Below, piece after piece: positions 5,831 to 33,272 of a stretch of 48,359 bases of DNA (positions within the stretch are counted from its first letter, which is position 1; every line of letters starts with the position of its first letter). This stretch comes from Octopus bimaculoides (Eukaryota), in the NCBI RefSeq assembly GCF_001194135.2, contig NC_069008.1, positions 11,872,170 through 11,920,528 of the forward strand, read 5' to 3'. The notes beneath the pieces were generated by a model. The model was not told the DNA's origin, did not search any database, and worked only from the letters and a program-made list of their open reading frames with translations. The position numbers and the translations under genes are program-made.

Positions 5831-6198
5831 TTGTTGTTGTTGGCACTCCGTCGCTTACGACGTCGAGGGTTCCAGTTGAACAGCCAGCTCATGAAATTAA
5901 CGTGCAAGTGGCTGAGCACTCCACAGGCACGTGTACCCTTAACGTAGTTCTCGGGGAGATTCAGCGTAACACAGTGTGACAAGGCTGACCCTTTAAATTA
6001 CAAGCACAACAGAAACAGGAAGTAAGAGTGAGAGAAAGTTGTGGTGGAAGAGTACAGCAGGGATCGCCACCATCCCCTCCCGGAGCCTTGTGGAACTTTA
6101 GGTGTTTTCGCTCAATAAACACTCACAACTCTGGGAATCGAAACTGCGATCCTATGACCGCGAGTTTGCTGCCCTAACCACTGGGCCATTGCGCCTCC
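5831..6198 (-). mobile_element. tRNA-derived SINE family C (probably octopus OR-type), full length
   Basis: Reverse complement has A-box TGGCCCAGTGG, a B-box-like GTTTCGATTCC and a (CAA)n tail. Collinear with 25881-26264. Confidence 0.85.
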
Positions 6199-8625: not shown

Positions 8626-9236
8626 ATGTGTAATTATCTCCATTCTTTCTCTCTTGTATTCTATTATTCTTTCATTTCGTGTGCTTTCTCTACCTTTCTC
8701 ACAGCTGATTCTCATTACCCCTCACCTTTTTTTTATCTCTGTCTCTCTTTCTCATTCTTTCTATCCATCCATAAACACACCTGTTTTTCTCTGTACACAA
8801 TCCTTTATCTGGAAATCTAAAATCCAAAAAGCCCCAAACCAAACTTTTTTGTGAAGGGTGGTGCACATTAACGCAGGGGTTGTTCTGTGTGCAAACAGCT
8901 GACCACCGTGACCTGACTCACTCAGGTATGATGTGGCAACACTTGGCAGGTTAGCTGTCCCTTACTGCCAAACATCAGGTATGACTCGGCACACCCAGCG
9001 AGAAGATGTCCATTTGCTGTTTGCTGGCTTTTGTTCTGAAATAAAAAAAAAAATCCTGAAATTCAGAGCACAATTGTCCCCAATGGTTCTGGATTAAGGA
9101 TTGCATACCTGTACTATATTACCTTTATTCTTCCTCAGTATCTCATCCTTCTTCCTTTCTTCCTTTTTCTTTCTTTCTGCATATTCCAAGGGCTACAATG
9201 TTCCAGTTTACATCTACCTGTCCAGCTGTGACCACA

Positions 9237-9528
9237 ATGCTGATATTAACTTTTGCAATAACTCTGACCATTACTTTGGGCCAGGAAGATACGGAATCCG
9301 CCTTCCAATATTTAGGACCTGGCTATACCTATAAGTACATTGAACCATCACCAACAGAAAACTTCTACCCAAGCCAAAATGTAATGGAATGCGCCATGAA
9401 ATCTTTATACAGTGGCTCACGATTCTTCAGTTACCACAAAGTCAGTCGTCTTTGTAAGAATTACTCAGCAAGAAGAAAATTAACAATGTCCACTACACAG
9501 GACAGCAATGAGATATCTTTCTATAGAG
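9237..9528 (+). CDS. Coding exon 1: signal peptide + PAN/apple-like module
   Basis: MLILTFAITLTITLG-QE hydrophobic leader; SQNVMECAMK...RFFSYHKVSRLCKNYS resembles PAN (ECA..C...F.Y....C) but has only two Cys. Donor AGAG|GTAGGT at 9528/9529. A polypyrimidine acceptor CCAAG| at 9190/9191 lies upstream. Confidence 0.85.
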
Positions 9529-10126
9529 GTAGGTGAAGCAATATTATTATTATTATTGAGTGAGAGAGCAGCACATGCCATCTAAGTGACACTGGGATAC
9601 ATATATATGAAGCCCAATATATCCATCATGACTACCCGTCTGATAAGGGTACATCAGGTACATGGATCACAACCATTTGTGCATGACACGGTGATCCTAA
9701 ATCTAAATAAACAGCACATGATTTTGCAGGTGGGGCCCAGTTAGAATTTTCTTCATGTCGAGTAGCCCATCCCGCTCAAAAGGACCTTGGATAAAGTTTG
9801 TTTCAGGATAATGAACGAAACACCCATGTTTCCAGAGTTGAATTATTCAAACGCCAAAGAATTCCTCTCAACACATGGCTATGCTGCTCTCCCACTATTT
9901 CTGCTTGTGATCAGAGATGCACATATTGTCAGCCACCAAGGGACATACTCAACTGGTTAAAATCAAACAACTGACAAACAAATTTGTGGTATAGAGCAGA
10001 ATATTTGCTGTAGCCCATCAGCAAGTATCCCAAGACAAAACAAAGTACATGATAACACTTCCAATCAGTTAAGATCAGAAGCCATGAGAGCCACTGCCTG
10101 GTACTGCATCAGGGCATTTGTTATTA

Positions 10127-10172
<46 letters not shown>

Positions 10173-10390
10173 GGCAGTGAGCTAGCAGAATTGTTAGCAC
10201 GCTGGGCAAAATGCTTAGCACCATTTCACCCATTGCTACATTCTGAGTTCAAATTCTGCCAAGGTCGACTTTACCTTTCATCCATTCGGAGTCGATAAAT
10301 TAAGTACCAGTGAAACACTGGGGTTGATGTAATCAACAATTCCCCTCCCCACAAAATCCAGGCCTTGTGCCTACAGTAGAAAGGATTATG

Positions 10391-10422
<32 letters not shown>

Positions 10423-12148
10423 CATTATTTTATGTTTGACTTTGCTTTGCATTTGTACAAGTTGGCTCCAAGTCTCACCCAGAGACCTCAAGAGACAACA
10501 AGTTAGAAGTTCATGTTGGTGTTATACCTAGGGTGTCATATATTTGGTTTTGTACATAGTGTTGTTCTAGAGAATGTTTAAGAAACTATAAGAAAATTAT
10601 GAGTTTGTTTTAAAATTTGAGATTAAATAGACAATATTTTACGCAAAATATGGGCAGATCCCATGAGCACTATTGTTTGAATTTCTGCCATTTTGGGGTT
10701 TCCTGGTATGTGAGTTAGGTAGCAATCAGCCTCTTTTGCTATCATTTCTAGGGCAACTATGACAACAGGTATTGTTTTAGTTTTGAGGTTCCACATTTTG
10801 CTAATTTCTATTTCAAGATCTTTATACTTGCTCAGTTTTTGGTAAGTCTTGACAGATATGTTTATATCGAATGGAACAGTCATATCAATGAAGAGGCATG
10901 ATTTTTGTCTGAAGTCTTTCAATATTTGGCCTATTTGCATCTATCTTTCTGTCAGTTTGAATGGTGAAGTTCCAGAGGAGTGAGATGTGATCATTTTCAA
11001 GCACTGGGGGTGGTTTGTGTTCCCACCATTTTTTATCATAGGGCAAGTCCAAGTTTTTGCAAATTACCCAGTGAATACAATGTGCAGCTCTATCATGCCT
11101 GTTGAGATACTCTGTAGGCGCAAGAAAACTGCACATGGAGACAACATGATCAATGGTCTCATTTTGTTGTTGACATACATGACATATTGGGGAGCTGCCA
11201 TTCTTTAATATGTTGCCCTGGTAGTTCCTTGTAGGTAGGCATTGATCTTGGGCTGCTATGATAAACACTTCTGTTACTGATTTTAAGCCAGAAGACACTA
11301 ACCATTGATGGGTAAGGGCTTTGTCAACATCGGCATTATTCGCTCTCTTTGGGTATTTGCCATTGAGAGGGTTTTCTTGCCAGTTATCAGTTATAATATC
11401 TAAGGTAGCAGTTTTAGCACGGGTTTTCACATGCTTAGCTTTTTCTGTGTTTGTTTCTAGTACGTCTAATTCTGGAATTTGTTGTATTTAGAATTCACTT
11501 ATATATCCCTTTGCCTGTTTTGTTACTGAGTAAGATGCTTTCTTGCTTTCATGTTTTGAGACAAGTTTTAACATCCAATCCTCAGAGTTTTTCAGGTAGG
11601 TGTCTCAGCCAATTGTGGCAATCTTCATTGTTAATAACAGTTGTAAAAGTCCACGGCCTCCCTCTTTTCATGGCAGATAAAGTCGTTCTATATCCTCTTT
11701 GGGGTGGTGCATTCAGTGCATTGTCAACAGTTTTCGTATTTTTCTGTTAAGATTACATATTTCAGTAATTGACCAGTTAACGATATTGAAACTGTCAGTC
11801 ACGACTGATATGGCTAAAGCATTGATCGCTTCAATCTTGTTTCTTGCATTCAGCTCTGTGTTAAGTATTGCTCTCATCCTGAAATAACATTCTCTTCTGA
11901 TCCTTTCCCTCATCACTGAATGCTTGATATTGTCCCCTTCAATTACCCCTAGGTATTTGTAGCTCTCCGCTGGTTCTAACTCTTTTATGACATTTTGCTG
12001 GTCATGGTTAACGTTAGATGTTTCTGTCATATTTCCTTTGATAAAGGTAGCTTTTGCACATTTATCAAGGCCAAATTGCATCCTGATGTCATCACTGAAT
12101 TGTTTAACAATCGCTAGTAAGCCCTTGAGTTGTTGGTCATTTTTTATT

Positions 12149-12205
<57 letters not shown>

Positions 12206-15200
12206 ATTATTATTATTATTAAGGTGGTGAGCTGGCAGAATCGTTAGCATGCTGGGCAAAATGTTTAGCAGTACTTCATTTGTCTTCATGTTCTAAGTTC
12301 GAATTTTACCAAGGTCAACTTTGCTTTCATCCTTTTGGGGTCGATTAAATAAGTACCATCTCAGTACCGGGGTCGATGTAATCCACTTAACCCCTTCCTC
12401 AAATTTCAGGCCTTGTACCTAGAAAGGATTATTATTATTAAGGTGGTGAGCTGGCAAAATCATTAGCACACCAAGAAAAATGCTTTGCAGTATTTCACCT
12501 GTTGCAACGTTCTCAGTTCAAATTCCACCGAGGTTGACTTTGCCTTTCATCCTTTTGAGGGTCAGTAAAAATAAGTACCAGATGAAAATTGGAGTCGATG
12601 TAATCGACTTAGCCTCTCGCCCAAAACTGCTGCCCTTGTGGCAAAATATGAAACCATTATTATTTTTTTTTTTTTTGGTATAAAGCTGTTGGAATCAATT
12701 GGGTGTCGGAAAGATATGCCTTGCAGTATTTGTTTCAGTTCTTTAAGTTTTGAGTTCAAATCCTACTAAGATCAATGTTGTCTTTCCTTACTCCCATCAT
12801 TAACTAGTGGACATTAATGTCTCTAATCCTGGGGCCCATTGAGCTGCAGCCCAGTTTTCATGGCATATAAGTGACTGAGATCACAATATCCTCCCTGAAC
12901 GAGACACCTGTCTGTGTCACAGCTGATTGGAGTGAGGCATCGTGAAATGATGTGTTTTGCTCCAGAACACAACGCCCCACCATGTCCAGGAATCAAAACC
13001 ACAATCTAACATTTATGGGCACAACACCCTAACCACTATGCCAGGCAGCTTCATTTTCATCATTTCGGGGTTAATAATACAAAGTAGTAATCAAGCCTTG
13101 GAGATCGATGGTATCAACTAACTCAAACCCCTCAAAACTATTCACCTCCTGGCCAAATCAGAAAGTATTATATTATTACACTTGGGAACACAGAATTTCA
13201 TGCCTGAGATATTAGACCCTATTTTTAGGTAAATTTTGGTCGTTGGCTCTAAATATGTCATCAGTTTTTTTCCATTGATTCTAGTTAATGAAATATGTTA
13301 TACCCCTAATTGCTATGCATACAGCCAATAGGGTACAAGAACTAATGACTACAAAACATTATTGTTGCCTTTTGCCTTTTGAATTGAGAAAATACAAGAA
13401 AACTATGTTTATTTATGATTAAATTACATTCATAGAACCTGATAATAATGAAACAAGCGTAGAAAGTTATCATTGATACAATGTTGATTTACTCAGATGT
13501 CTCACAAAAGCACAGTTCTTAAGATTTTCTTGATGAAGTGTCCTGGTACAAGTGCGTTGAATCGTCCACCATCATATGAGTATCCCAGTGTTCCTGTGAT
13601 CTTTCTGCCATAGTTCTTAAATTTTGGTGGAACCATTCACTCTGTTCATTTAGGTCACCAAGATTGTCTGAGAAATGATCCAAGTTGCTGAGGAGGGGAA
13701 GCTCATATTACAGCCCCAAGTTGATGGAAAGAGAGAATGTTCTGCACTTGTTCAGGGTAGTTATCTGCTTCATGCCTCCAGAAAAATCTCTTACAACCAG
13801 AATGAATGAAAACTATGCATCTGCCTCAATATTGTTCATTGACTCTTGGAAATGTGGATCTTTCATGAGTACCCTTATTAGTGGCCTGACGAAAATACCT
13901 ACCTTCAGTTTTCCAGTTGGAATATTCTGCTTGTGTAGTCAAAACAGGTTCATTCTTTATTCAAAGCCTTCACATACTGTTTCATTAAACCTAGTTTGAT
14001 ATGCAATGATGGTAAAATGGTCTTATCTTTGTCAACCAAGGGCTCTGCAATCACAGACTTTTCTCTATCGACTGTTTTCACTTAAAGGTCATTGTTTTCT
14101 TGCTCACTGCTCATCCCGAGATCTACTATCCCGGAGACTAGTAAAGCAGAGATACTGGGTGCATCCACTCTTTTGACCCTGGTGAACATTCACCATCAGC
14201 CATCTGTGATAGTGGTATTATATCTTTAGTAAGACCAGGGTGATTATTTCCTGCTCCCCAGTTGTCTTAGATAAGTGGTCAATTAGGATTGATCCATATT
14301 TATTGCTATTGTGTAGAAACCCATATTTTAAGCTCTGCTCAGAAATGTCTATGAATAACTGCCATTGGTACATGCTTTTCATCAACAAACCTTGAATATC
14401 GAAGTAAAAATAATCCAAATTATTTTCCTCCGAGAAGAAGGGCATTAAATCCATTTCTTTATTGTGATACTACGTGATATTGGAACTGGTTGCAGTAAAT
14501 TCTTTTCTGTTAGCCTGGACAGCAACAATCCTGTTGATTTCTTCAAGGCATTTAGTTCTCTAATGTGGCTATTAAGCTCTGACTGACAAAAACCTCCTGC
14601 CAAGTTCCTTCATATCTGTTCCACTTTTTCCCACAAGAACTGTCTACAGCAGAATTAAAGGATTCATCTTCTTCAAGGAGCTCTTCCAGATGAGTGAATG
14701 ATGGGACACTTACTTTATCAGAGTGTACAACAGGTTGTTCTGCAGAGTCTAGGTCAGGATACGTCCATTTCTTCTAATTATGTCCATTAATAAACTTTAT
14801 GTTAAGCAAACAGAAGTAACAGCCATCACTGTAGTTTCTCTGTTCTCTCCAGAATATTGGTATGCCAAATTTTCAGACATTTTCTCTTGCCAGTAGTCCC
14901 CTGCTGCAGTTACTCACAACTTTTTCAAACAATGTGTGAAGCCCATGTTTTGACTTGGTCTCCCAGAATTAGAAATGAATTTTCTCCACTCCTTACATGT
15001 GTATTATTCACAGATATAGCAGAAAGAATCTGGATGGTTCAAAAGCTTTCTTTGTGAGGAAGTCATATCAAGACGTCATGAAAATGACAGAGGTAGATTT
15101 AGTTGATAGACTTGTGTAATACCAATATTCAAATTACTAACTATTAAAATTTTACATAGTGTTTCCACATGTGACAGAAATGTTTTCAGTGAAAAACAAA

Positions 15201-18200
15201 ATTACTATTACACAGCAGTTAAATGACAATCCTGTTTACTTTTGGCATTAACAGGGAACACAGCCTGTGACATGCTCGTGAGAAATATTAGAGCTGCTAG
15301 AAACAAATGAAAGTCATATTCTTATTCAATAGCGTGAACTCAAAATTACAATCTGAAGTATGAAAAGAAATGTTTAAAATTTACTTCATGTTGTTATTAA
15401 TATTTTCTGTATTTCAGTTGAGGATTGGATGAAAGTCTATGCCATATCAAGAGGCACTGGTTCAGATGTCCGTAACTCTTTTCTCGGTTATGGAACTCCT
15501 TCATCATGGAACGTAGACAAATGTAAAGATAACATTTGTCCTAACTTCTTCCGGCATCCCCTCTTAGACACCTGGGATTCTTTACAAATTGATGAGGTAT
15601 GTACAAACACACACACACACATACACACACAATACTTCAACACACTTGCATTCACGTTTTTTTTTTTTTTGCATGTTTCAGTCACTGAAAATAATAATAA
15701 TCCTTTCTACTAAAGGCACAAGGCCTGAAATCTTGGGGGAGAGGACTAGTCAATTTCATCAATTCCAGTATTTCATTGGTACTTAATTTATAGACCCTGA
15801 AAAAGATGAAAAGCAAAGTCAACTTTGGCAGAATTTGAACTCAGATTGTAGCGACAGGCAAAATACTGCTAAGCACTTCATTCAGCATGGTAACAATTCT
15901 GCTGGCTCTCTGCCTTACTGAAAATAATGATAAGAAAAGAAATTACAATGAAGGTGCATGGCTCTGTGGTGAGNNNNNNNNNNNNNNNNNNNNNNNNNNN
16001 NNNNNNNNNNNNNNNNNNNNNNNNNNNNNNNNNNNNNNNNNNNNNNNNNNNNNNNNNNNNNNNNNNNGTAGGAATGAGTTGTGACATCACTGGTGCCAAG
16101 CTGTATCAGCTTCTGCCTTTCCTTTGGATAACATCGGTAGCATGGAGAGGGGAGGCTAGTATGAGTAGGTGACTGTTGACCTTCCATAAAGAACATTGCC
16201 CTGACTTGTGCCTTGGAAGGAAACTTTCTTGGTGCAATCCCATGGTCATTCATGACCGAAGCGGGGTCTTTACTGAGCTGGGTCCATGCTGGGGTACCAA
16301 CTTGAAGGGTTTTAGTTGAGAAAATTGATTACACTACTTACTTTTTTTTTTTTTAAACTGGTACTTATTTTATCAAACATGCATGTAAACAAAGCAATAC
16401 CAGTTGTCAAGTGGTGCTTGACACACACAAACACAAAGGTAGCAAAAACACACATATATAATTATATGTGAAGGAATTTCATGCAGTTTCTCTAGACAAA
16501 TTCACTCACAAGGCATTGGTAAACCTGGAGTTATTGTAGAAGCCACTTGCCCAAGATTCCCGGCAGCAAAACTGAACATGAACCCATGTAGCTGAATTTC
16601 TAAACCATACATTTATGCTTGTGCCTTTAGTTGAAAATTTTTTATCCCCCCAATACACTGTGTAATCTAAAAGTATGGAACATACATACTGAAATGTGGA
16701 ACATACAGAACTGAAATTTTAGTATTATAAATATTGCCTTGATATCATATGGATTGATTTCCCCGTTAACCGACCACTTGGATATGTAATCTTAGATTTC
16801 CAAATAATGTCTTCTAATGAGGTCGACCAAAGTTGTAATGCTGTATTCACATGCGATGGGAAACTGGACAGTGTATTCTGTCAATGCCAGTGGTCCTTAA
16901 GGCTCTATTCTTGGACCAACTCTATTGTTCCTCTACATCAACAAATTTCTTGCCAATATAAATCAATTCATCAATGCTCATGTTGATGTTCCTGCTCTTT
17001 ATTCTAGTTTTTCTAGCAATCCCTCTAAGAAATGGGACAAAAAGTGACTAGTAACTTTCAGCTCTAGCAAGACCAAATTCCTGTCTTTCAGTAGGAATAG
17101 GAAGCTGGATCCCTATCTTCCTCCCATTTACATAGGTTACAGGCCAAAGGTAAGACAGTCAAACCACTTGAGGAAAGGTCTTCTTTGAAACTGTTTGGTC
17201 TTACTTTCTCATCTGACATTCTTATGGTTCTTAAATATAATCAGTTGGCAGGTATGCTTCCAGTCAACCGTCAGGAGATCTAGGGGTAGACCAGGAATGA
17301 GAGAGTGGGATAATATCCATAGTTTCAGTTGGTCTCACATAAGAATCCAGCAGGAAAGTGTGTTGACGATTGTTTCTGATCGGACCCTATTGAGCAGGTG
17401 CCTAAGGAAACAATTACAATCGTACAAATGGTGTGTGGTGAAAATGAACAGATGGCTGGAAAATTGTGATGCCTGTTCACAGTAGTGAGTAGCAGGGCTA
17501 TAGCATTTACAATAAACAAGGCATTTGATTCTCGAAGGCAATATCACAAAATTTCTCTTTCTTCTTCTGTATTATATATGAATATTATATTTTCAGGTGA
17601 AACTGGTATTATACAAAAATCAAACACCTGTCCTAAATATGGTCTTTAATGGACGAAATACAACAAGAAAAAACTGGTTTTCTTTTGAAAACCTGAAAAG
17701 TTCCCCATGGAATGACTTGAATCAAGGCATGGCCGAAGTATTCTCAATTAATGGAAATCAGTATGCTAATTTTATCACTTTATGTTATTTAATTGTGTTT
17801 CTTTATGTTCTGTGATCAAATGCCCCAGCTGTTAACTTTGGTTTTCATCCATCGGATACCAATATATAAAGTATCTCTCAACTCCTTTATTTAACCAAAT
17901 AAACTTTATGTTTTTGTTGTCCAAAACACCATATCATATTCAGAAATCATTTTTAATTATGGATTGTGGTACTATGCTCAAGTTCAACTTTGACTTTCAG
18001 CTTTCCATGGACAATATCATAAAGTACCAGTTTCTTCAACTACATGACAGCCACGTGACTTCTTTCAGAAATACAGAAAAAGGAAGTAAAATAAAACAAT
18101 TCAGTTGTTCCTAATGTTTAAAAGGAAAATTCCACTGAATTTTCGTCAAGTAGGTCATCCAGCTCGGGATAGGATGCAGAAGAACTGGGTCAGCATCAGA

Positions 18201-21084
18201 ATGTCAGGCACCACATACATCAAGGTGATCTGCACTAGTCTAACGGAATACAAGTTGGTGACAGGAGCAAAAATGAACCAGCTGGTCTATTTTGAAAGAT
18301 TTTCGAGCCTGCTGCTGCCATCGATAACTTCCAAGCACTTCTGACTGGCAGTGCTACCGAGGAGCACTGCCAGTTTGAGATGAACTCAACTGGGTACAAA
18401 AGTGCTGGAAGGTGTGACTGTCCAAGATATGCACAGAGTGACAAAACCATTCCGCATGCACTCGTGCACTGTCAGAGTATTACTAACTTGTGAAAATATG
18501 CTGAACAGCTGTTATCACGAGTGGTTCAAATCCATCTATCAGCCAAATCCATCATGAGGATCACCTCAGCCCTCACCTTTATCAAGGTAGGGCAGGCAGT
18601 GTTCCTCTGTCTAGTAGCTTTGGCGAAAGAGGTTGTGTGATGGATGAGGCTGAAATGATTCAGGAAAGACACCTTCGTCTTCGGTCAAGCTCTCATCATT
18701 TATGTTATCACTTTGTATATATAGTATACTTATGTAAACTCCATCACAAATTGTATTCTGTCCTTATGATGCCCCCCTTATCTATGCCCTTGTGGCTAAT
18801 AGAAAAATTATTATTATCATCATCATCATCATCATCGTCATTATTTCGGTTTTGTTCAGGTTCGGTCTTATTCCTGGTAAAATTTATGTGGATAGCGTGT
18901 TACTACTTGTAACCTTAGGCGCCCACAAGCTTCCAACAGTCATTCAAGTGCTTTGGCAGAATCATAAGCACACCAAGCAAAATGCTCGGTGGTATTTCAT
19001 TCATCTTTATGTTCTGACTTTGATTTTGCTTTTCATCCTTTCGGGGTCAATGAAATAAGTATCAGTTGAACACTGGAATCAATGGCATCAACTGTCCCCT
19101 CTCCCAGATTTCAGACCTTGTGCCTATAGTAGAAAGGATTATTATTATTATCTACTTTTAATCTGCATGTTTGTTACAGTCACTTGTCGAGACACACCCA
19201 GTGCCCTGGGGCGAGTGAAGGATAAGAGATGTTACAGTATGACTGAAAGCTTGGGGAGGGGAAGTAGCGAAACATCTTCATGTAATACAACACAGACATT
19301 TAAATTGATAGGGTTTTTCTAAGGATGTGGGCAGTACTTGTCAGCACAATCTTTCGGATTTCTCTGAGACATGGTTCTCCTGGGAACTTATCTAGATGTT
19401 TCTAACATCCCTTTTTGTTATCATACCTAGGTCACCTACAGTAAGAGGGACAGTTCTCGTTTTAAGATGTTACATCTTTTGTATTTCAATTTCCAGGTCC
19501 TTATATTTATTTAATTTGTCAAATTCCTCGACAGATATATTTTTATCAGTGGAAACACTTACATATATTAGTCTACAAATATTTTCTTCCCTACCTTTAA
19601 TAATTATGTCTGGTCGATTAGCCTGGATCATTCTGTCAGTGTTGACAGGAAAATCTCAGAGGATATTGACATTTTTACATTCAACAATTGGCTCAGGATG
19701 ATGTTCATATCAGTAAGCAGGAGTGCTGATTTTCTAGTGTTTACATATTTTCCAATGTAAATACTGTCCTACCCTATCATGGGGATTTTTGCATTTGTTT
19801 GGCGCCAGCAAAGGATATCACGAGATAAGATGGTCTATTGTTTCATCAAATGTGTTACAGAATCTGCATTTAGGGTCTGAACTGTTTTGAAGAACGTTAG
19901 ACTGGTAGTTTCTTGTGAGCAAGCTTTGATCTTGTGCTGTCAATATAAAACCTTCAGTCTCTGTTTTCAGTCTTGAACTTCTCAGCCACTGATGGGTTAT
20001 TTCTTGATCTACATTAACATTTCGACTTCGAAGTATATACTGTCCATGCAGAGACCTCTGGCTCCACTGCTCCTCAATTTGTTTCTGCCCATTCTTTTTT
20101 GCAGTTTGCTCGATCCATTTTGCTTGTTTTGTGGTAGTGGCTTCAGGTTCTTCAAATATTTCAGGATTAATGTCAAGTTCAATTGCGAATTTGCAAGCTT
20201 CCTTGACAATTGAATGTGATTTTTTGCTGCTTTCATGTCTGCACACAAGTGGCAGCATCTAGTCCTCTATACTAGATAAGTACCTGTTCATTGCTATTGT
20301 GGAGGTCTTACAGCACAGTTCTACCTGCATCATTCCTCTCCCCTCATTACTTCTAGGTAGGGACAGATGATCAGCATCTGCTTTTGAGTGGTGCATGTTC
20401 TTAGAAGTTAGTATTTTTCCTGTCTTCCTGTCCAGGCATTAGAGTTCTGTAAGATTCCAGTTAATGATGTTAAAACTATATTGGACTACTGGAAGTGCCA
20501 GGGTGTTAATGGCTTTGATGCGATTTTTAGAGTTCAGTTCAGATTTTAGTATGAGTCTTATTCTCCTGTAATGTTCCTTTCTTATTTTTTTCCTTCATGG
20601 TAGCATGTTGTATACCATTTCCTTCATTTATCTCCAGGTATTGGCAATTTTCTTGTCAGTCGAGCTCCTTGATGGTAGAGTCAGTATCTAATTTAATGGA
20701 AGATGTTTGCCTGAGCTTGCCTCTTACAAAAGTTGCTTTAGCACACTTATCAAGGCCAAAGTCCATCCTGATGTCATTAATGAATTCTTTAACATCTGTT
20801 AGCAACCCTGCTAGCTCTTCATTATTTCTAGCAAACAACTTCAGATTGTGTACATAAAACAAATGGTTTATTGTTGCATTGTAAACTTTGAACCCATACC
20901 TAGTGTTATTTAGTTCGTTTGAGAGTGGGATCAGTGCCATGCAAAAGAGCAAAATGGAAAGAGAGTCACCTTGAAAGATGCCTTGTTTGGTGTTGATGTT
21001 GTTAGTTTGGCTCATCCCATTACTATGGTTTAGAAGGAGATGTGTGTTCCACTTGGCCATGATACCTTGTAAGGATTATGACAA

Positions 21085-21147
<63 letters not shown>

Positions 21148-23904
21148 CATTATTACTACTTCTACTACTATTACTATTATTATTATTATTCAATTGATTT
21201 GCATTTTATTTTATCTTCCAACTGGGTCTCAGCCAGAGACCTTAAGACACGTGTATGTTAGATGGAGAGAAACTTCCAGAGAATGTGGGGCATTGACATC
21301 AACACAATTTTTTTAATCTCGTAGATTGTTGACTTCCCAGGGATCTGATCGAAAATTTGTCAGTACCTTTCTTGATCATTCTCAGGGCACCTACAACAAC
21401 AGGGGTGGTTTTGGTTTTTAATTGTCACGTCTTAGATATCTCAATCTCAAGCTCCTTATATTTCAACAGTTTTTCAAATTTCTTTGCTGAGATGTTTCTC
21501 TCAGTAGGCACAGTCATATCAATTAGCAGGCATGTTTTTTGTCTTAGGTCTTTGATGACGATGTCTGGTCTGTTAGTATTTATTTGTCTGTATGTATGTA
21601 TCCCATAATCCCATAGGATGATAACATTCTCTCTCTCAGTGACTGGCTCTGGATGATGTTCATACAAGTTCTTAAGGTGTGGGATTTCACAGTGACAGCA
21701 TATATTCCAGTGCAAGTATTGGCCAACTTGATCATGCCTGGTTTTATATTCTGTAGAGACAAGGACTGAGCAACCACCAACAACACGGTCTACACCCTCA
21801 AGTTTGTCATTGCAGAGTCTATACTTTGTGTTTACCTCATTGTCTGTGACATTAGCTTGATGATTCCAAATGAGGGGACTCTGATCTTGTGCCGCTAGGA
21901 TAAATCCTTCTTTTTTGGCTTTCAAACCAGCATTCTGTAACCACTGATGAGTTCTTCTCATATCTACATCAGTTTCCCCAGCTCATTTGGGGTATTGCTC
22001 ATGCAATGGTTTTTCTTTCCACAGTCTTGATATTACCTTCAAGCTTTTGTTTTACACCTTTTTGCTGCCTTAGTGGGTGGTGTGTCCTCCTTATCATCAT
22101 CATAATCAGGAAGGTTTAGCTCTCATCTGTATTAATATTCTTCCTTTGAGATTGAGTGCAGTTTCTTACTCTGTACATGTTGCCTTACCAGCTGCGTCAT
22201 CCAGTCGATGTTACTTTTGATGTACACTTGAAGTCCTATCATTGTCATTTTATAGAACATTTCAAGTTGGATTATCCCTCTACCACCTTCCTTTCATGAG
22301 AGATAAAGCCTGTGGACGTCTGATTTTGGGTGGTGCATCTTGTTTAGTGTCAGCAGTTTCCTGCTCTTTATGTCCATATGCTAGAGTTCACTCAGATTCC
22401 AATTAATGACATTAAGGTTATACTGGACAACTGGTACTGCCAAGGAGTTTATAGCTGCGATTCTATTCTGGGAGCTCAGTTCAGTATTCAGGACTATTCT
22501 GACACATCTATAATACTCTTTCATTGATCCATGTTGAATCCCTTTCCCTTCTTGTATCCCAAGATACTTATAAAAGCTTTGTTGGTCCAGGTCTTAGATA
22601 AATGTATCATGATCACTTTGGGTCATGGTATTAGCTGTCAGCTTACTATGTTTGAACGAAGCTTTTGCACACTTATCAAGGCCAAATTCCATATTGATGA
22701 CATCACTGAATTTTTTCAGTTACTAGTAGCCCTTTCAGGTCCTTATCATCTTTTGCATGTAATTTCAGATCATCCTTGTAGAGCAAGTGTGAGATGATCT
22801 TGTCCAATATTTTGTAATGGTAATTTGTACTATCCAGCATGTAGGACAAGGGAATTAGGGAAAAACAGAAGAGAGGGGAGGGTGAATTGGCCTTGAATAT
22901 TCTGTCACATATGAGCCTTTCTCATGGTTGAGAAACAATTTTGTGTTCCACAGTGCCATACTGTGCTGTAGAAAACATATTGCGAAAGGAGTGATCATGT
23001 ATATATTTAATGCCTTTAAGATTCAGCTTCTGCCGAGGTCGATTATGCTTATCATTCTTTCAGGCTCAATGAAGTAAGTACCAATCATGTACTGGGGTCA
23101 GTGTAGTAGACTTAGCCCTCTCCCACAAAATTTCAAGTCTTGTGCCAAAAGCAGAAAGGATTATGGTAATTGTTCAGTTTAGGGATATCAAAAAAGTAAA
23201 TAAAATCCAAGGGGGAGATAACTAGTAAAAAGACATAAGTCAACTTAAATACCGTAGTATGGTGACATGGCAAATTATAATTTTCGCATGTGTATAGATT
23301 CATAATTAGTCGATGCCATGCCAACCACTGAAGAATCTTGTCTCATGATTCAGCTAATTGGGTGATATTCCAAGATTCCTCCACATGCCATTCTGATCAA
23401 TTCCAAAGGAGCACAAATGTAATTTCAATCAAGAACAAAATAAGAATTTTTAACACTAACGTAAATGCGGTGTTATTGTGTGGGGCTGAGACATGGCAAA
23501 CAACAGTTAAGTCAAATAAGCAAATACAATCATTCATCAACAGGTGCTTGCATAGTATACTTAGAATTAGATGGCCCGAACACATAAGCAATATGGAGCT
23601 ATGGCAAAGAACAAATCAAGTTTCGATTAGGGAGCAAATATTTAAGAAAAAGTGGAAGTGGATTGGTAGCACAATTAGAAAGGACACACCAAATGTAGTG
23701 AAAAGTGCTTTACAGTGGAATCCGGATGGATATAGAAAGAGGGGTCGGCCTAAGAACTCGTAGCGTAGATCAACACAAAAGGAACTAGAGAAAGGGGGAC
23801 ATTCATGGCAGAGTATAAGTACAGAAGCCAAAAATTATGAAACATGGAATTCAGTTATAAGTAGCCTATACTCTGTGTTGGAGGGTTAAAGGCAAAAAAA
23901 AAAA

Positions 23905-23935
<31 letters not shown>

Positions 23936-26900
23936 CTATATTAATATTATTATCATCATGGCCATCAGCCTGGCAAGCCACACTTTTTATAAAGAAAAAA
24001 CACAAAATAGTTTTATTTACACTCTTCAATTTATATCAGCATGGAGAACAAGTTATTTGCTGTTGAGTGGTGAGTTTATTTTCCTGTTTTGTCCCCCAAT
24101 TTTGAGGGATAGGTCAATTGTTTTGGGTTTTTTTAAGCAAAGTTGTGTGCATTTTCCCCACCAACATGAAGAAAACACAAAACACGGAGATGCTTATATG
24201 TGTGAGAGAGGGAAAAAGTGAGGTGCGTCACCAAATGTCAATGAGAGTGAGAGTGCATGTGTGTGAAGTGACTTTGGTCTGAGAAAAAAACAGACTAGAG
24301 TTGTATTTTTGTCAGAAAAAAGGACAAAAAATGACAAGGGAGCCAATTTTTTCAAGAAGGATCACTTGGAAGATCTTTTGAAAAGCAAGGGCTCTGTTTT
24401 CAACAACATTATTCGAAGTGAAAGCATTAATTTCAAAAATGTAAGCGGTGAAAGCCCTTCCGTGAGTGAGGCAATGGATGAGTTAACTACATATAACAAC
24501 AACAGCAAGAACAACAACATCAGCAGCACTATCAACAACCACAATAACAAAGGTGACAACAGCAACAACAAAACCAACAACGGCAGCAACAACAGCAATG
24601 ACAAAGACTACAAAAGATCTGAGACACAAACTGGTAGAACGGCTTGGAACAGCTCTTCAAAACCTCCTTTGGCTGGAGCAGCCAAGTCATCTCATCAGAG
24701 AATACGATTCTCCAAAAAGGAACTTAAATATGCTAGACAGCTAGTCGAGAGGGAGAGAATAGCTGTAAAGTTAAATACCCCACCTGAGACAATCCAGGAT
24801 ACAATACATCGCACAGTGACGTACTTCACAATTGGGTTAAAGTCAAGGAGGGTGGAAAGAGCCACAGAGGCTCAAATACAACAAGCTTTAGATTCCATCT
24901 GGAATCTAAAGGAATATATACAGAGAGGAAGGGCTTATGGAATGGTGGATGTTTGATTCCACACCGAGGAAGAACCCAAACATCACTCTCTGAATCCCCT
25001 CAAAAGCAAAGAGCTGTCGCTAGTTCTTTACTACTGTGGTCAGGGACTGCCAAAATTATAATTCAGTAGATGCTGCCAGAAATAGCCTTTCCTTAGCTAA
25101 TTGCAACAGTGATGATAGACATTGAGAAAAACTTGAAAATCTTCGAAGCCTATCAGACAAAAAAGGAGAACCAGTCTGAGATAACCATAGAACTCATACA
25201 AACAACACAAAAGAATGTGGATCTCATCCCAGACCAGATCCTTCTTCCTGGGGGCAGCATAATTCCAGTCAGGGTAGATGGAAAAATAGCAAAGTGCCAC
25301 TTTGCTTTTCACCTAAGTATTTAAAAGCTGATTGCCCTAAACAAAACGAAAACAAGAGACGGGCACCTCTCCTCTCTACACCAACAATAGCCACCAGAAC
25401 TCCAGCAACAACAGCAGATTCAGCTGTAGTACCACTAACACCAACAAGCATACCAACACCGAGTTCACCCAAACACTTCTCAGCACCCAAAGATGTTCCA
25501 CTTCCCAATGCAGAGCAGGAGGACATCACAGCTGGAGAGACAGACTGCGATGAGGACTGGCAGTTAAAAACGATAAAATGTAAAAGAGACAGAAGGAGAA
25601 ATAAACAAATGGACAAACAACAACAACAACAATCCTCATCCACACAAAAAGTGGAAAGGAAAAAAAATCAAAACAACAAAACAAAATATGCCCAAAATGA
25701 ACACTACATTAACACCACCACCTGTGACACCTAAAAGACAAGCCATTCCACACATACAACCACAAAAACAATCATAACCACAACAACAACAACATCAAAC
25801 ATAAAGACAGCAACATTATGAACCACATGGCAATAAACTCAAAACAACGATGAATCAATGAAATATATAACAGACACAGTGGAGCCACAGTGGCCCAGTG
25901 GTTAGGGCAGCGGACTCGCGCTCATAGGATCGCGGTTTCGATTCCCAGACCGGGCGTTGTGAGTGTTTATTGAGCGAAACACCTAAAAAGCTCCACGAGG
26001 CTCCAGCAGGGGATGGTGGCGAACCCTGCTGTACTCTTTCACCACAACTTTCTTTCGCTCTTACTTCCTGTTTCTGTTGTGCCTGTAATTCAAAGGGTCA
26101 GCCTTGTCACACTGTGTCACGCTGAATATCCCCGAGAACTACGTTAAGGGTACACATGCCTGTGGAGTGCTTAGCCACTTCCACGTTAATTTCACGAGTA
26201 GGCTGTTCGGTTGATCGGATCAACTGGAACCCTCGACGTCGTAAGCGACGGAGTGCCAACAACAATAACAGGCACAATCATCACACCAAAAGATTTTGTC
26301 ACACCCACATTCTTCCTACCTGCACATATACAAATCATTCAAACAACACAAAACATATATGCATACTTAAATACCCAAACCCCACAGGAAATTGGAGATT
26401 TTTGAGGGAATATCACCAAAAGAAGTCTTGGAGATTTGCTGTTTGAAACACCCCCAAGACAATAGGAGGGACGAGCAATCCTACCCTCCAAACAAAACCA
26501 AATAAGTCTGCTTGAATGTATATGGCCTGGGGTCATCTTGTAAGCAGGGTCACCTGCTCAATGACCTCAGGGAACTGATGGAAAAAGCACCTGCCCCAAA
26601 AGTCAGGGCACCCATGGTTTTTATGGGATTTTTCCATGAGCAGCCCTTAAACGTCTCCTTCCTATTGAGGATTACACATTGTTGATCTCGTTTTGTAACT
26701 TTAGTCTTATTTACACACAAAACCCTCACAACTACACACACTCACACACATACATTTTTTTTTTGTTTTGTCCTCTGCTGTCCATAATGTTTTTCTTCAA
26801 TGTAAACCCTTATAGTTAATATGCGTGCAGTTTCAAGTAAAGATGATTTTTGCAATACTCTATAATTATTATTATTATTATTAATCTGTCAATAAAAACC

Positions 26901-27529
26901 TGTCTCAAGTTTGTACATCTTCCTCTTTCTGGCTTGCAGTTACAATCGTTTCTTTTATATTGGCGGGTATGGATCTTGTGCAACAGACTATGGTTGGTTT
27001 ACCATTCTGCAAATGGACCAGGCTTGTCAGTATGAAAGGAAACAATATCCTGCATTCATTTACTCTAATACTAGTTCAATGGTCAGATGGAGTGAGGGTA
27101 AGTAGATTTGTGTTTGACAAAATATCTGTGTGTGTTTTTGTGTCTTGTAGTAGTAGTAGAAGTAAGTGGTGGTAGTAGTAGTAGCAGCAGCAGTAGCAGT
27201 TGTAGTAGTGGTAGTAGTTGCTGTTGCTATTATTGCTTATGTTATTGTTGTTGTTATTGAAATTAATGTTCTTATATTCTCATTCGCCACTGCTGGGACG
27301 AGTTCCATCTCCCTCGGACGTATGCATTTTGTATTTTTAAAATACACATTCACATGAAACACCACTATTTTCTGGACTTATAACTGCAGTAAATTTTGCT
27401 TCCCACAATATATTTACATTAGTTATGATACATAAATGGCTATTGTAATTAATTTTATTGTTATTGTTATTTTCAGGACATGCAACAGCCGATTCTATGG
27501 CTGTATTTCTCCATATAAAACCAGAATAA
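9237..27529 (+). CDS. Five-exon gene for a secreted ~281-aa protein: signal peptide + PAN/apple-like module + unnamed C-terminal domain; join(9237..9528,15418..15596,17597..17760,26940..27097,27477..27529)
   Basis: All four introns are GT-AG with matching phases (1,0,2,1). The spliced CDS is 846 nt, an open frame ending in TAA. An alternative in-frame ATG at 9198 would add 13 aa. Confidence 0.88.
9559..10119. repeat. Unclassified interspersed repeat bounded by (ATT)n runs
   Basis: Non-coding block between ATT tracts at 9541-9558 and 10120-10170. I recognise it as an octopus-like repeat but cannot assign a class. Confidence 0.4.
10171..10385 (+). mobile_element. tRNA-derived SINE family B (Nin/Deu-domain-like core)
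   Basis: AAGG..GTGAGCTAGCAGAA head, GTCGACTTT.CCTTTCATCC...GTCGATAAATTAAGTACCAG core and AGAAAGG(ATT)n tail. Confidence 0.8.
10428..12143 (-). mobile_element. R4/Dong-like non-LTR retrotransposon, 5'-truncated, copy 1
   Basis: Frameshifted ORFs give FGLDKCAKATF, YKYLGV, AAQDQCLPTRNY, CHVC...HVVSMC (CCHC), RHD and restriction-like endonuclease NRP(N)I...FIDMTVP...K..KY. The 3' end runs into (TAA)n. Confidence 0.9.
12221..12790 (+). mobile_element. Tandem array of SINE family B copies (12221-12428, 12440-12655, partial ~12678-12790)
   Basis: Repeated AAGGTGGTGAGCTGGCA heads separated by (ATT)n. Confidence 0.85.
12795..13042 (-). mobile_element. Diverged tRNA-derived SINE (another family)
   Basis: Reverse complement starts GGCATAGTGGTTAGGGTGTTG...GATTCCTGGAC (A/B-box-like). 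Confidence 0.55.
13179..15191 (-). mobile_element. Decayed DNA transposon, CMC/Chapaev3-like transposase pseudogene
   Basis: Minus-strand translation from ATG ~15066 gives HPDSFCYIC, FGIPIFWREQRNYSDGCYFC, YPDLDSAEQPV, ILPSLHIKLGLMKQYVKAL and LDHFSDNLGDLNEQSEWFHQ, with many stops and frameshifts. CAC...GTG termini are tentative, and the superfamily is assigned from recalled motifs. Confidence 0.7.
15418..15596 (+). CDS. Coding exon 2 (VEDWMKVYAISRGTG...FRHPLLDTWDSLQIDE)
   Basis: Acceptor TATTTCAG| at 15417/15418 (phase 1); donor GAG|GTATGT at 15596/15597 (phase 0). Confidence 0.88.
15701..15916 (-). mobile_element. SINE family B
   Basis: Reverse complement of the 10171-10385 pattern, with an (AAT)n tail at 15691-15700. 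Confidence 0.8.
16880..17000 (+). mobile_element. Reverse-transcriptase remnant (CR1/L2/Jockey-like)
   Basis: Translates SGP*GSILGPTLLFLYIN, a decayed GVPQGSILGP.LF.LYIN RT motif. Extent uncertain. Confidence 0.45.
17597..17760 (+). CDS. Coding exon 3 (VKLVLYKNQ...NWFSFENLKSSPWNDL...FSINGN)
   Basis: Acceptor TTTTCAG| at 17596/17597 (phase 0); donor CA|GTATGC at 17760/17761 (phase 2). Confidence 0.88.
18945..19138 (+). mobile_element. SINE family B
   Basis: Same core and AGAAAGG(ATT)n tail. Confidence 0.75.
19151..21066 (-). mobile_element. R4/Dong-like LINE, 5'-truncated, copy 2
   Basis: QGIFQGDSLS, FGLDKCAKATF, TAQDQSLLTRNY, CRFC...DHLIS, ANRPDIII; frameshifted. Confidence 0.9.
21085..21190. 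repeat. (ATT)n microsatellite separating LINE copies 2 and 3
   Basis: Direct inspection. Confidence 0.95.
21191..22805 (-). mobile_element. R4/Dong-like LINE, 5'-truncated, copy 3
   Basis: HLLYKDDLKL (YxDD), EFGLDKCAK, AAQDQ, RHD, NRPDIVIKD...LIDMTVP...KYKELEIEI. The 3' UTR GTCTCAGCCAGAGACC resembles copy 1. Confidence 0.9.
23346..23895 (+). mobile_element. RTE-clade LINE 3' fragment
   Basis: KIRIFNTNVNAVLLCGAETW...CLHSILRIRWPEHISN.ELW...KWIG...WNPDGYRKRGRPK is the RTE ORF C-terminus; an A-run follows. Confidence 0.85.
24309..26898 (+). mobile_element. L1/Tx1-like element: decayed ORF1 plus first codons of ORF2
   Basis: A 215-aa open ORF1 N-terminus, then broken frames with VRVDGKIAKCHF(C)FSPKYLKADCP (CCHC-knuckle remnant) and a Pro/Thr-rich tail. 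CLNVYGL..K..HLLNDL at 26509-26570 resembles an APE endonuclease start. Boundaries uncertain. Confidence 0.6.
25881..26264 (+). mobile_element. SINE family C, full length, with 14-bp TSD
   Basis: A/B boxes and (CAA)n tail; TSD ATAACAGACACAGT (25867-25880) / ATAACAGGCACAAT (26265-26278), 2 mismatches. Confidence 0.9.
26940..27097 (+). CDS. Coding exon 4 (YNRFFYIGGYGSCATDYGWF...YPAFIYSNTSSMVRWSE)
   Basis: Acceptor CTTCCTCTTTCTGGCTTGCAG| at 26939/26940 (phase 2); donor GAGG|GTAAGT at 27097/27098 (phase 1). Confidence 0.9.
27477..27529 (+). CDS. Terminal coding exon 5 (GHATADSMAVFLHIKPE*)
   Basis: Acceptor TTATTTTCAG| at 27476/27477 (phase 1); TAA at 27527-27529. Confidence 0.8.

Positions 27530-31761: not shown

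Positions 31762-33272
<1,511 letters not shown>

What the first reader, a model, noticed from the sequence alone, without database searches (positions are those of the whole stretch)
9237..27529. Hidden five-exon gene for a secreted PAN-like + unnamed-domain protein
Seen: five exons spread over 18 kb of transposon debris splice in frame (phases 1,0,2,1) into 281 aa. The product has a signal peptide, a two-Cys PAN/apple-like module, and a ~185-aa domain with W.KV...RGTG, RHP.L..W, V.L.LY, WF...L.SSPW.DL, FSI.G, RFF...YG.C..D.GW, P.F.YS and AD..AVF. It carries sequons NYS, NQT, NTT and NTS. From recollection, similar unnamed domains occur in many uncharacterised mollusc and other marine-invertebrate proteins. 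Inference: an extracellular binding or lectin-like protein, possibly with a distant fibrinogen-like fold. This is the best candidate for undescribed host biology here.
Basis: partly seen in the sequence, partly recalled or inferred. Interest (0 to 1): 0.8.

Follow-up and report, generated by a model that had tools for sequence, protein, structure and literature searches.

The report
Octopus secreted PAN plus fibrinogen-like gene
A real five-exon Octopus bimaculoides gene, only half-annotated in public records, encodes a probably secreted protein with a degenerate PAN/apple module and a widespread but unnamed marine-invertebrate domain that looks like a very divergent, N-terminally shortened fibrinogen-related domain.

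Summary
Five + strand exons (9198/9237-9528, 15418-15596, 17597-17760, 26940-27097, 27477-27529) have canonical AG/GT sites and phases 1,0,2,1. They splice to 281 aa, or 294 aa from the upstream ATG that the paralogs conserve. The N gap lies inside intron 2 and interrupts no coding sequence.

The window is Octopus bimaculoides. The public model LOC106873528 covers exons 1-3 only and reads through the exon 3 donor. A full-length paralog has the same exon sizes and phases, and about 12 paralogs align end to end with the five-exon product.

The N-terminal module is a degenerate PAN domain with two of the four core Cys. The C-terminal ~185-aa domain has no Pfam or PDB sequence match. It does define a large family: 1036 cluster representatives from molluscs, brachiopod, hemichordate, amphioxus, echinoderms, corals and some bacteria.

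Coral and bacterial members carry the canonical fibrinogen A-subdomain motif (CDMTTDGGGWT) directly upstream of the domain and colinear with it. A confident AlphaFold model (pLDDT 91) finds fibrinogen-like domains as its best PDB matches, but weakly (TM 0.34-0.44).

Best reading: a secreted recognition protein built on a divergent, A-subdomain-less fibrinogen-related fold. Function and the exon 3-4 junction are untested by transcripts.

The parts
9198..9528 (+). It encodes the predicted signal peptide (MFQFTSTCPAVTTMLILTFAITLTITLG|QED, about 9198-9281) and the degenerate two-Cys PAN/apple-like module, with sequon NYS. It ends in phase 1 at donor AG|GTAGGT.
   Evidence: P0001 starts at 9198; paralog exon 1 is also 331 nt.
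9529..15417 (+). Intron 1 (5.9 kb). It carries minus-strand reverse-transcriptase fragments (about 10623-12081) and microsatellites.
   Evidence: zf-RVT hit for ORF 10885-11430 on the minus strand.
15418..15596 (+). Exon 2 (179 nt, ends in phase 0). This is the start of the C-terminal domain: W.KVYAISRGTGS strand, CKDNIC loop, NFFRHPLLDTW helix.
   Evidence: paralog exon 2 is also 179 nt.
15597..17596 (+). Intron 2. It contains the assembly gap at 15974-16067 (94 N). No coding sequence is affected.
17597..17760 (+). Exon 3 (164 nt, ends in phase 2): VKLVLYKNQT...NGRNTT...WFSFENLKSSPWNDL...FSINGN. The public model reads on past this donor (CA|GTATGC) to a stop at 17813-17815.
   Evidence: paralog exon 3 is also 164 nt.
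17761..26939 (+). Intron 3 (9.2 kb, against 3.2 kb in paralog P0003). It is swollen by retroelement debris: RVT_1 and zf-RVT ORFs on the minus strand at 19470-21961, and other repeat-derived ORFs.
26940..27097 (+). Exon 4 (158 nt, ends in phase 1): (H)YNRFFYIGGYGSCATDYGWFTILQMDQACQYERKQYPAFIYSNTSSMVRWSEG. It holds the conserved Cys pair C225/C241 and is the most variable exon among paralogs. It is not annotated in the public record.
27477..27529 (+). Exon 5 (53 nt with the TAA stop): (G)HATADSMAVFLHIKPE, the conserved last strand of the domain. It is not annotated in the public record.
   Evidence: paralog exon 5 is also 53 nt.

Best explanation
This is an intact five-exon Octopus bimaculoides gene on chromosome record CM046628.1, about 11.88 Mb. 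It is a divergent member (about 50% identity) of a PAN-plus-domain family with many copies in Octopus. Two copies adjoin each other in the one paralog locus examined, and nine O. bimaculoides members lie on the same chromosome record.

The product is most likely a secreted, N-glycosylated two-module protein. After a cleavable signal peptide comes a degenerate PAN/apple module held by a single disulfide. This is followed by a ~185-aa beta-rich domain from a large, unnamed family of extracellular domains found in marine invertebrates and some bacteria.

That domain is best understood as a highly divergent fibrinogen-related (FBG-like) domain that has lost the N-terminal half of subdomain A. It starts at the strand equivalent to the 'WTVIQRR' strand of fibrinogen-related domains. 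It keeps a Cys...D.GW...Cys loop where canonical domains have the P-subdomain disulfide, and it ends in an 'AD..AIFIR' strand equivalent to '..MKIRP'.

Inferred mechanism: like ficolins, FREPs, tachylectin-5 and intelectins, it would act outside the cell as a recognition or binding module for glycans or other surface ligands. The exon 4-encoded loop region would be the diversified contact surface, and the PAN module would contribute a second protein or carbohydrate contact.

Shown: gene structure, family membership, PAN ancestry, distribution, domain partners and the fibrinogen A-subdomain link. Inferred: secretion, disulfides, ligand binding and the role of exon 4.
For: Gene model:
- Splice sites are canonical and the frame is continuous.
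- Exon sizes and phases are identical to annotated paralog P0003.
- The product aligns end to end with about 12 paralogs and keeps all 40 family-invariant residues, including nine in exons 4-5.
- Each of the five exons occurs only once in the window.

Family:
- 40 Octopus proteins hit at E<=1e-33.
- Two paralogs adjoin each other in locus L001.
- A profile search found 1036 representatives at E<=1e-3 and 626 at E<=1e-10.
- Sources are molluscs, Lingula, Ptychodera, Branchiostoma, crinoids, Acanthaster, corals, a Myxococcota bacterium and unnamed metagenome contigs.

Extracellular context: in other proteins the domain sits beside F5/8-C, SUEL lectin, C-type lectin, WSC, PAN, EGF, TSP1, VWD, kringle and ZP domains.

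PAN ancestry: PAN_1 scores above gathering in homologs at the same position (31.5 and 29.4 bits against a 21.4 cut-off), and PAN_1/PAN_3 score weakly in the octopus paralogs.

Fibrinogen link:
- (i) A domain-only AlphaFold model has pLDDT 91.4 and pTM 0.88. Its top 18 Foldseek PDB hits are all fibrinogen-like domains. The full-length model gave the same kind of list.
- (ii) Five of the top 150 homologs (coral Pocillopora P0152, Myxococcota P0081, and P0087, P0099 and P0118 from unnamed metagenome or assembly contigs) carry 'G.Y.IDP....V.CDMTTDGGGWT' directly upstream of the domain, and they align colinearly with the octopus domain from that W to the C-terminus.
- (iii) These units score above Pfam's Fibrinogen_C cut-off on profile positions 4-53. 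They also hit FIBCD1, angiopoietin-2, fibrinogen beta/gamma, ficolin and intelectin chains in the PDB, E 1e-7 and weaker.
- (iv) hhalign of link-plus-family against a fibrinogen-domain alignment gives 95.9% probability (E 6e-9) over 57 columns. The match runs past GGGW into 'W.lvFr..G.g..Vyd.W', which pairs with 'WtvfqrR.dGs.vdF.r.W'.

Variable region: exon 4 is the most variable exon among paralogs, at 47% against 62-69%.
Against: - The octopus-type domain alone shows no profile-profile similarity to canonical fibrinogen-related domains (hhalign probability 0.1%).
- It has no Pfam hit even at E<=10 and no meaningful PDB profile hit: one sub-threshold match at E 0.81 to an unrelated lipoprotein.
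- Foldseek matches are weak: best E 0.03, TM 0.34-0.44, none at E<=1e-3.
- The significant hhalign signal comes mainly from the A-subdomain of the link proteins. Homology of the B/P-like core therefore rests on colinearity, fold ranking and motif-level resemblance.
- The acidic Ca2+-site motif of canonical domains (D.D.D before the P-domain Cys) is absent; the sequence there is RFFYIGGYGSC.
- No ligand, expression or transcript data were reachable.
- The public gene model stops after exon 3, as do several paralog models. A short isoform, or non-use of exons 4-5, therefore cannot be excluded.
- The signal peptide was judged by eye.
Confidence: 0.62

Rival explanations
1. The gene model is right, but the C-terminal domain is an independent beta-rich fold with no common ancestry with fibrinogen-related domains. 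In corals and bacteria a fibrinogen/COLFI-type A-subdomain was simply fused in front of it.
For: hhalign of the domain alone against fibrinogen-related domains is null. Foldseek TM-scores stay below 0.45. Sequence hits of the link proteins to fibrinogen-related domains stop at about residue 55. The same N-terminal piece also matches the collagen COLFI profile, so it occurs in front of different cores.
Against: The 'GGGWT..' strand of the A/B boundary is shared and colinear with the first strand of the octopus domain. The hhalign match extends about 18 columns into that domain. Among 350,542 PDB chains, the best 18 fold matches are all fibrinogen-like domains. In known structures the A-subdomain is not an autonomous module (established knowledge, recalled).
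Confidence: 0.22
2. The locus is a decaying or truncated copy. Only exons 1-3 are expressed, as in the public 242-aa model, and exons 4-5 are stranded relics behind a 9.2-kb intron full of transposons.
For: The public annotation ends by read-through of the exon 3 donor. No full-length protein for this locus is in the 5.8-billion-cluster database. Intron 3 is three times longer than in the paralog and contains retroelement fragments. Several paralog models are truncated in the same way.
Against: Exons 4 and 5 are open and have canonical acceptor and donor sites in the right phases. They retain every family-invariant residue: C225, W231, C241, P249, Y253, S254, W262, D270 and F275. A protein stopping after exon 3 would lack half of a single compact domain. 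The repeated truncation of models looks like an annotation problem caused by long repeat-rich introns.
Confidence: 0.12
3. The protein is not a recognition molecule. It is instead a structural or matrix component (mucus, sucker or cuticle lining, egg coat), and the domain serves in self-assembly.
For: Relatives combine the domain with ZP, VWD, EGF, TSP1 and fibronectin type III matrix modules. Fibrinogen-related domains also mediate polymerisation, as in fibrin, tenascin and MFAP4 (established knowledge).
Against: Lectin-type partners are just as frequent: F5/8-C, SUEL, C-type lectin and WSC. The multi-copy family whose most variable exon encodes the P-loop-equivalent region fits diversified recognition better. 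No data discriminate between the two.
Confidence: 0.15

Closest known systems
Fibrinogen-related domain proteins (Pfam Fibrinogen_C PF00147: ficolins, FIBCD1, angiopoietins, tenascin, tachylectin-5A, mollusc FREPs)
   Same: They are extracellular. They are the best, and almost the only, fold matches. The order of strands and helices is the same from the 'W-T-V-I-Q-R-R' strand onward (my reading against recalled fibrinogen-domain structure). A Cys...GW...Cys loop sits where the P-subdomain disulfide lies, and the terminal strand resembles 'MKIRP'. Coral and bacterial homologs still carry the canonical A-subdomain. In invertebrates these domains are often multi-copy families used for recognition.
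   Different: The octopus domain has no detectable sequence similarity to the Fibrinogen_C profile. It lacks the first ~45 residues of subdomain A, including its disulfide. It lacks the acidic Ca2+ site. It is about 185 aa rather than about 220. TM-scores are only 0.34-0.44. It is combined with a PAN module rather than collagen, coiled-coil or IgSF stalks.
Intelectins / X-type lectins (e.g. human intelectin-1, Xenopus XEEL)
   Same: This is another lineage in which only the fibrinogen A-subdomain ('GGGWTLV') is recognisable by sequence and the rest has diverged. The link proteins hit intelectin-1 and XEEL in that segment. Intelectins are secreted glycan-binding proteins.
   Different: Intelectins keep the A-subdomain and have a larger, different core. 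Foldseek TM to intelectin-1 is only 0.29. No intelectin Ca2+ or diol-binding motifs are evident.
PAN/apple domain proteins (Pfam PAN_1, PAN_3, PAN_4)
   Same: The N-terminal module is homologous to bona fide PAN domains in more distant family members. A PAN plus this-domain architecture also occurs in the coral Pocillopora and the crinoid Antedon.
   Different: The window's copy does not reach any Pfam PAN threshold. It has lost the two inner core cysteines and keeps a single Cys pair, C52/C73.
Public gene model LOC106873528 (Octopus bimaculoides, 242 aa, 'uncharacterized protein')
   Same: Same locus, same start codon (9198) and the same exons 1-3.
   Different: It reads through the exon 3 donor and terminates in intron 3. 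It therefore lacks exons 4-5 (69 residues), which means the domain's Cys pair and its last four strands.

Membership tests
Unnamed PAN + ~185-aa domain family of Octopus (LOC106873068, LOC106872447, LOC118768521 etc.) | Full-length alignment and retention of family-invariant residues | tested here: met
   43-50% identity end to end to 13 paralogs, with 40 invariant columns all kept. E down to 1e-90 for paralogs.
Unnamed PAN + ~185-aa domain family of Octopus | Five-exon structure with phases 1,0,2,1 | tested here: met
   Window exons are 331/179/164/158/53 nt. Paralog P0003 exons are 331/179/164/164/53 nt, with the same phases.
Fibrinogen-related domain (Pfam PF00147 Fibrinogen_C) | Significant match to the family profile | tested here: not met
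   No Pfam hit at E<=10 for the window protein or for 40 domain homologs. hhalign of the domain against a fibrinogen-domain alignment gives probability 0.1%.
Fibrinogen-related domain (Pfam PF00147 Fibrinogen_C) | Subdomain A with 'C..SG.Y.I.P....V.CDM..GGGWT' and its disulfide | tested here: not met
   The octopus domain begins at the W of that motif, and a PAN module precedes it. The motif is present in coral and bacterial homologs of the same family.
Fibrinogen-related domain (Pfam PF00147 Fibrinogen_C) | B + P subdomain fold | tested here: inconclusive
   With a pLDDT 91 model, the top 18 Foldseek PDB hits are all fibrinogen-like domains. But E is 0.03-0.4 and TM 0.34-0.44.
Fibrinogen-related domain (Pfam PF00147 Fibrinogen_C) | P-subdomain disulfide loop 'C....GGWW...C' | tested here: inconclusive
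   The conserved C225-x5-GW-x9-C241 is present ('SCATDYGWFTILQMDQAC'). It pairs with the fibrinogen loop only in a low-confidence extended hhalign. The disulfide itself was not verified.
Fibrinogen-related domain (Pfam PF00147 Fibrinogen_C) | Ca2+ site 'D.D.D' preceding the P-loop Cys | tested here: not met
   The sequence before C225 is NRFFYIGGYGS, and the family consensus is RRFFIN..YGGC, with no acidic cluster. Positional equivalence rests on a low-confidence alignment.
PAN/apple domain (Pfam PF00024 and relatives) | Profile match above the gathering score | tested here: not met
   No hit for the window protein. Only 2 of 14 paralogs hit PAN_3 (best E 0.005) and 1 of 14 hits PAN_1 (E 0.17). 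Homologs P0092 (31.5 bits) and P0080 (29.4 bits) pass the 21.4-bit cut-off at the homologous position.
PAN/apple domain (Pfam PF00024 and relatives) | Four-Cys core C..C....C....C | tested here: not met
   Only the first and last Cys are kept (C52, C73). The inner pair is present in distant members (P0056, P0064, P0080, P0092) but replaced in the octopus copies.
Intelectin / X-type lectin | Intelectin core fold and A-subdomain | tested here: not met
   Foldseek TM to 4wmq is 0.29, at rank 24. There is no PDB sequence hit.
Secreted protein | Cleavable N-terminal signal peptide | not testable with these tools
   The hydrophobic stretch MLILTFAITLTITLG followed by QED is conserved in paralogs, and it is modelled as a helix in paralog residues 9-25. 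No signal-peptide predictor was available.

The most novel reading that the evidence does not exclude
The domain defines a third, so far unnamed lineage of the fibrinogen-related superfamily, alongside canonical FReDs and intelectins. It would be an 'A-less' B+P-type module that arose before the cnidarian-bilaterian split (or moved between animals and bacteria). It now forms a large repertoire of extracellular recognition domains in marine invertebrates. In octopus it would have expanded into a multi-copy family of secreted PAN-linked receptors whose exon 4 loop is diversified for ligand recognition, making it a new class of invertebrate pattern-recognition lectins.
Probability: 0.35. Interest if true: 0.65.

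Novelty: new variant of a known kind. Interest (0 to 1): 0.5.

Why it matters
There are three reasons.

- The public annotation of this locus, and apparently of several paralogs, is truncated. The five-exon model restores a complete domain.
- The C-terminal domain is a large 'dark' family. It has more than 1000 representative clusters at 50% identity and no Pfam model, and every member seen is labelled uncharacterized. It spreads over molluscs, brachiopods, hemichordates, cephalochordates, echinoderms, corals and some bacteria, often next to lectin modules. Tying it to the fibrinogen-related superfamily through the coral and bacterial intermediates gives it a testable functional frame, namely glycan or pattern recognition.
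- Fibrinogen-related proteins are central to mollusc immunity (FREPs). An additional cryptic branch, expanded in octopus, would enlarge the known recognition repertoire of cephalopods, whose immune receptors are poorly known.

Tried and rejected
- The spliced 281/294-aa protein could not be handed to the search of protein representatives, structure prediction or the look-up of encoding contigs. Paralogs P0003 and P0004 (50-53% identical) were modelled instead. No search for transcript-derived copies of the full protein was possible.
- The full-length AlphaFold model from 14 sequences was poor (pLDDT 58, PAN region below 50). It was replaced by a domain-only model from 54 diverse sequences.
- The PDB profile search with the domain gave only a chance-level hit to an S-layer lipoprotein (E 0.81).
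- Pfam DUF7922 appeared as a summed 32-bit hit over four repeats of amphioxus P0041. It was not reproduced on a single repeat or on 40 domain members, so it was dropped.
- The search for homologous proteins with the domain alignment returned little beyond Octopus. Taxonomy came from cluster look-ups instead.
- COLFI was considered as an alternative relative because the N-terminal piece of link protein P0087 also matches it. No collagen C-propeptide structure appears among the fold matches.
- Galectin and alginate-lyase jelly rolls appear in the Foldseek list only at probability <=0.1 and were rejected.
- Literature searches found nothing on these loci or on this domain.
- I considered that exons 4-5 might belong to another paralog copy. 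This was rejected because the window holds exactly one copy of each exon.
Full report
**What is there.** The window is Octopus bimaculoides genomic DNA. The spliced product matches LOC106873528 at 99% identity and a set of Octopus proteins at about 50%. The public gene sits on CM046628.1 at 11,881,367-11,889,984.

- The exons are 9237-9528, 15418-15596, 17597-17760, 26940-27097 and 27477-27529, on the + strand.
- All acceptors are pyrimidine tract + AG and all donors are GT.
- Phases are 1,0,2,1, giving 846 nt and 281 aa.
- The sequons are N75, N165, N178 and N255, and there are six cysteines.
- tblastn of all family proteins against the window finds exactly one copy of each exon, in order, and nothing else of this family.

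**The gap.** The N run at 15974-16067 lies within intron 2. Exons 2 and 3 are 179 and 164 nt, exactly as in a paralog. The protein alignment is continuous across that junction. The gap therefore affects only the intron length.

**Is the model right?** The public model (P0001, 242 aa) uses the ATG at 9198 and exons 1-3. It then reads through the exon 3 donor to a stop in intron 3. No gene is called over exons 4-5.

Three things favour the five-exon model.
- The full-length annotated paralog P0003 has exons of 331/179/164/164/53 nt with phases 1,0,2,1. From the ATG at 9198 the window gives 331/179/164/158/53 nt.
- The spliced protein aligns end to end with about 12 full-length paralogs. It keeps all 40 invariant positions, nine of them encoded by exons 4-5.
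- A product ending after exon 3 would cut a single compact domain in half.

The start is therefore probably 9198 (294 aa), not 9237. Transcript evidence could not be obtained, because the tools refuse a spliced query. The exon 3-4 junction across a 9.2-kb intron full of retroelement debris thus remains inferred. Several paralog models are truncated at the same place. I read this as an annotation artefact, but a short isoform is not excluded.

**The N-terminal module.** The window protein has no Pfam hit, and its paralogs give only weak PAN_1/PAN_3 hits. More distant proteins that match the whole-protein profile from its N-terminus show the classic PAN core C...C....C..F.Y....C. Aplysia P0092 and P0080 pass the PAN_1 gathering score at that position, with 31.5 and 29.4 bits against a 21.4 cut-off. 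The octopus copies keep only the outer two cysteines. 'Two-Cys PAN-like' is a fair description.

**The C-terminal domain.** There is no Pfam match for the window protein or for 40 diverse homologs, even at E<=10. There is no PDB sequence or profile match.

A profile search of 1.84 billion representatives finds 1036 proteins at E<=1e-3 and 626 at E<=1e-10. Those looked up come from:
- Octopus, Argonauta, Haliotis, Pomacea, Aplysia, Nucella, Pecten, Argopecten, Potamilus and a chiton;
- Lingula, Ptychodera and Branchiostoma;
- crinoids and Acanthaster;
- the corals Oculina and Pocillopora;
- a Myxococcota bacterium and several unnamed metagenome or assembly contigs.

Nearly all carry no functional name: they are labelled uncharacterized, hypothetical or unnamed, and a few have automatic '-like' names taken from other domains. 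In larger proteins the domain sits next to F5/8-C, SUEL lectin, C-type lectin, WSC, PAN, EGF, TSP1, VWD, kringle, fibronectin type III and ZP modules, sometimes in tandem copies. It is thus a mobile extracellular module.

**Relation to fibrinogen-related domains.** The evidence is mixed and should be kept in layers.

Against a relationship:
- hhalign of the domain alone against an alignment of five canonical domains is null.
- Foldseek scores are weak (E >= 0.03, TM 0.34-0.44).

For a relationship:
- With a confident domain model (pLDDT 91.4), the 18 best PDB matches are all fibrinogen-like domains: fibrinogen beta/gamma, ANGPTL3/6, FGL1 and MFAP4. Ficolins, angiopoietin-2 and fibrinogen alpha-EC follow lower in the list. 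The earlier full-length model gave the same kind of list.
- Five of the top 150 homologs carry the hallmark A-subdomain motif 'G.Y.IDP....V.CDMTTDGGGWT' immediately upstream. They are Myxococcota P0081, coral Pocillopora P0152, and P0087, P0099 and P0118 from unnamed contigs.
- These units align colinearly with the octopus domain from that tryptophan to the C-terminus.
- They pass Pfam's Fibrinogen_C cut-off, but only on profile positions 4-53.
- In the same segment they hit FIBCD1, angiopoietin-2, fibrinogen, ficolin and intelectin chains.
- hhalign of link-plus-family against canonical domains gives 95.9% probability (E 6e-9) over 57 columns. The match runs into the octopus-type segment, pairing 'W.lvFr..G.g..Vyd.W' with 'WtvfqrR.dGs.vdF.r.W'.
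- At low stringency the alignment also pairs the Cys...GW...Cys loop with the P-subdomain disulfide loop, and the last strand with 'MKI(R)P'. This is low-confidence.

I conclude that the domain is most likely a very divergent fibrinogen-related fold that has lost the N-terminal half of subdomain A. The situation parallels the intelectins, where only subdomain A stays recognisable. It is not a member of Pfam Fibrinogen_C, and it lacks the canonical acidic Ca2+ motif.

**How it probably works.** This section is inference. A signal peptide (MFQF...TLTITLG|QED, read by eye) sends the protein outside the cell. There are four sequons, and three Cys pairs are available for disulfides. The fibrinogen-like module would bind a ligand, with the PAN module as a second contact.

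Among paralogs, exon 4 is clearly the most variable exon (47% mean identity against 62-69%). It encodes the Cys-loop region that corresponds to the ligand-binding P subdomain. This fits a diversified recognition surface in a multi-copy family: about 15 proteins listed from O. bimaculoides and about 20 from O. sinensis, two copies adjoining in locus L001, and nine O. bimaculoides members on the same chromosome record. A structural or matrix role is the main functional rival.

**Novelty.** The locus is already in the databases, but truncated and unnamed. The domain family has no Pfam model, and I found no literature on it. The link to the fibrinogen superfamily via coral and bacterial intermediates appears to be new, though a description outside the searchable library cannot be excluded. 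I rate it a new variant of a known kind and of moderate interest.

Noticed in passing
window 10623-12081 (-) and 19470-21961 (-): Broken reverse-transcriptase ORFs (Pfam RVT_1 and zf-RVT at sub-threshold scores) lie on the opposite strand inside introns 1 and 3.
   Followed up: partly
window 46398-47717 (+): An uninterrupted 439-aa ORF made almost wholly of C2H2 zinc fingers (13 or more fingers; zf-C2H2 E 1e-73). It is probably a single-exon member of the large octopus C2H2 expansion.
   Followed up: partly
window 40657-41595 (+): A 312-aa ORF with an ISXO2/IS1595-like DDE transposase domain (E 6e-14, above the Pfam cut-off). It looks like a DNA-transposon remnant or a domesticated copy.
   Followed up: no
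window 26105-26233 (+) and 5862-5957 (-); also L001 4157-4243 and 16897-17055: A dispersed repeat encodes '..CSVDRINWNPRRRKRRSANNNN..'. It recurs near family genes and has been incorporated into at least one predicted family protein (P0036), a likely mis-annotation.
   Followed up: no
Paralog models P0016, P0017, P0020, P0021, P0025 (public Octopus annotations): Several paralog gene models stop right after exon 3, like the model for this locus. This is either a systematic annotation failure across long repeat-rich introns or a real short isoform class.
   Followed up: no
window 26940-27097 (exon 4) compared with paralogs: Exon 4 is the most variable exon of the family (47% mean paralog-paralog identity against 62-69% for the other exons). 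It is a candidate for a diversified ligand-contact region.
   Followed up: partly
P0081 (Myxococcota, 2194 aa), and P0087, P0099, P0118 from unnamed metagenome or assembly contigs: Large surface-type proteins carry two or three tandem units of fibrinogen A-subdomain plus this domain. P0081 also has eight TIG repeats. This raises the question of transfer between animals and bacteria.
   Followed up: partly
window 5568-5826, 6840-6849, 32452-32925: There are three further assembly gaps outside the gene. ORFs listed across them (e.g. 31831-32988) are artefacts of the N runs.
   Followed up: no
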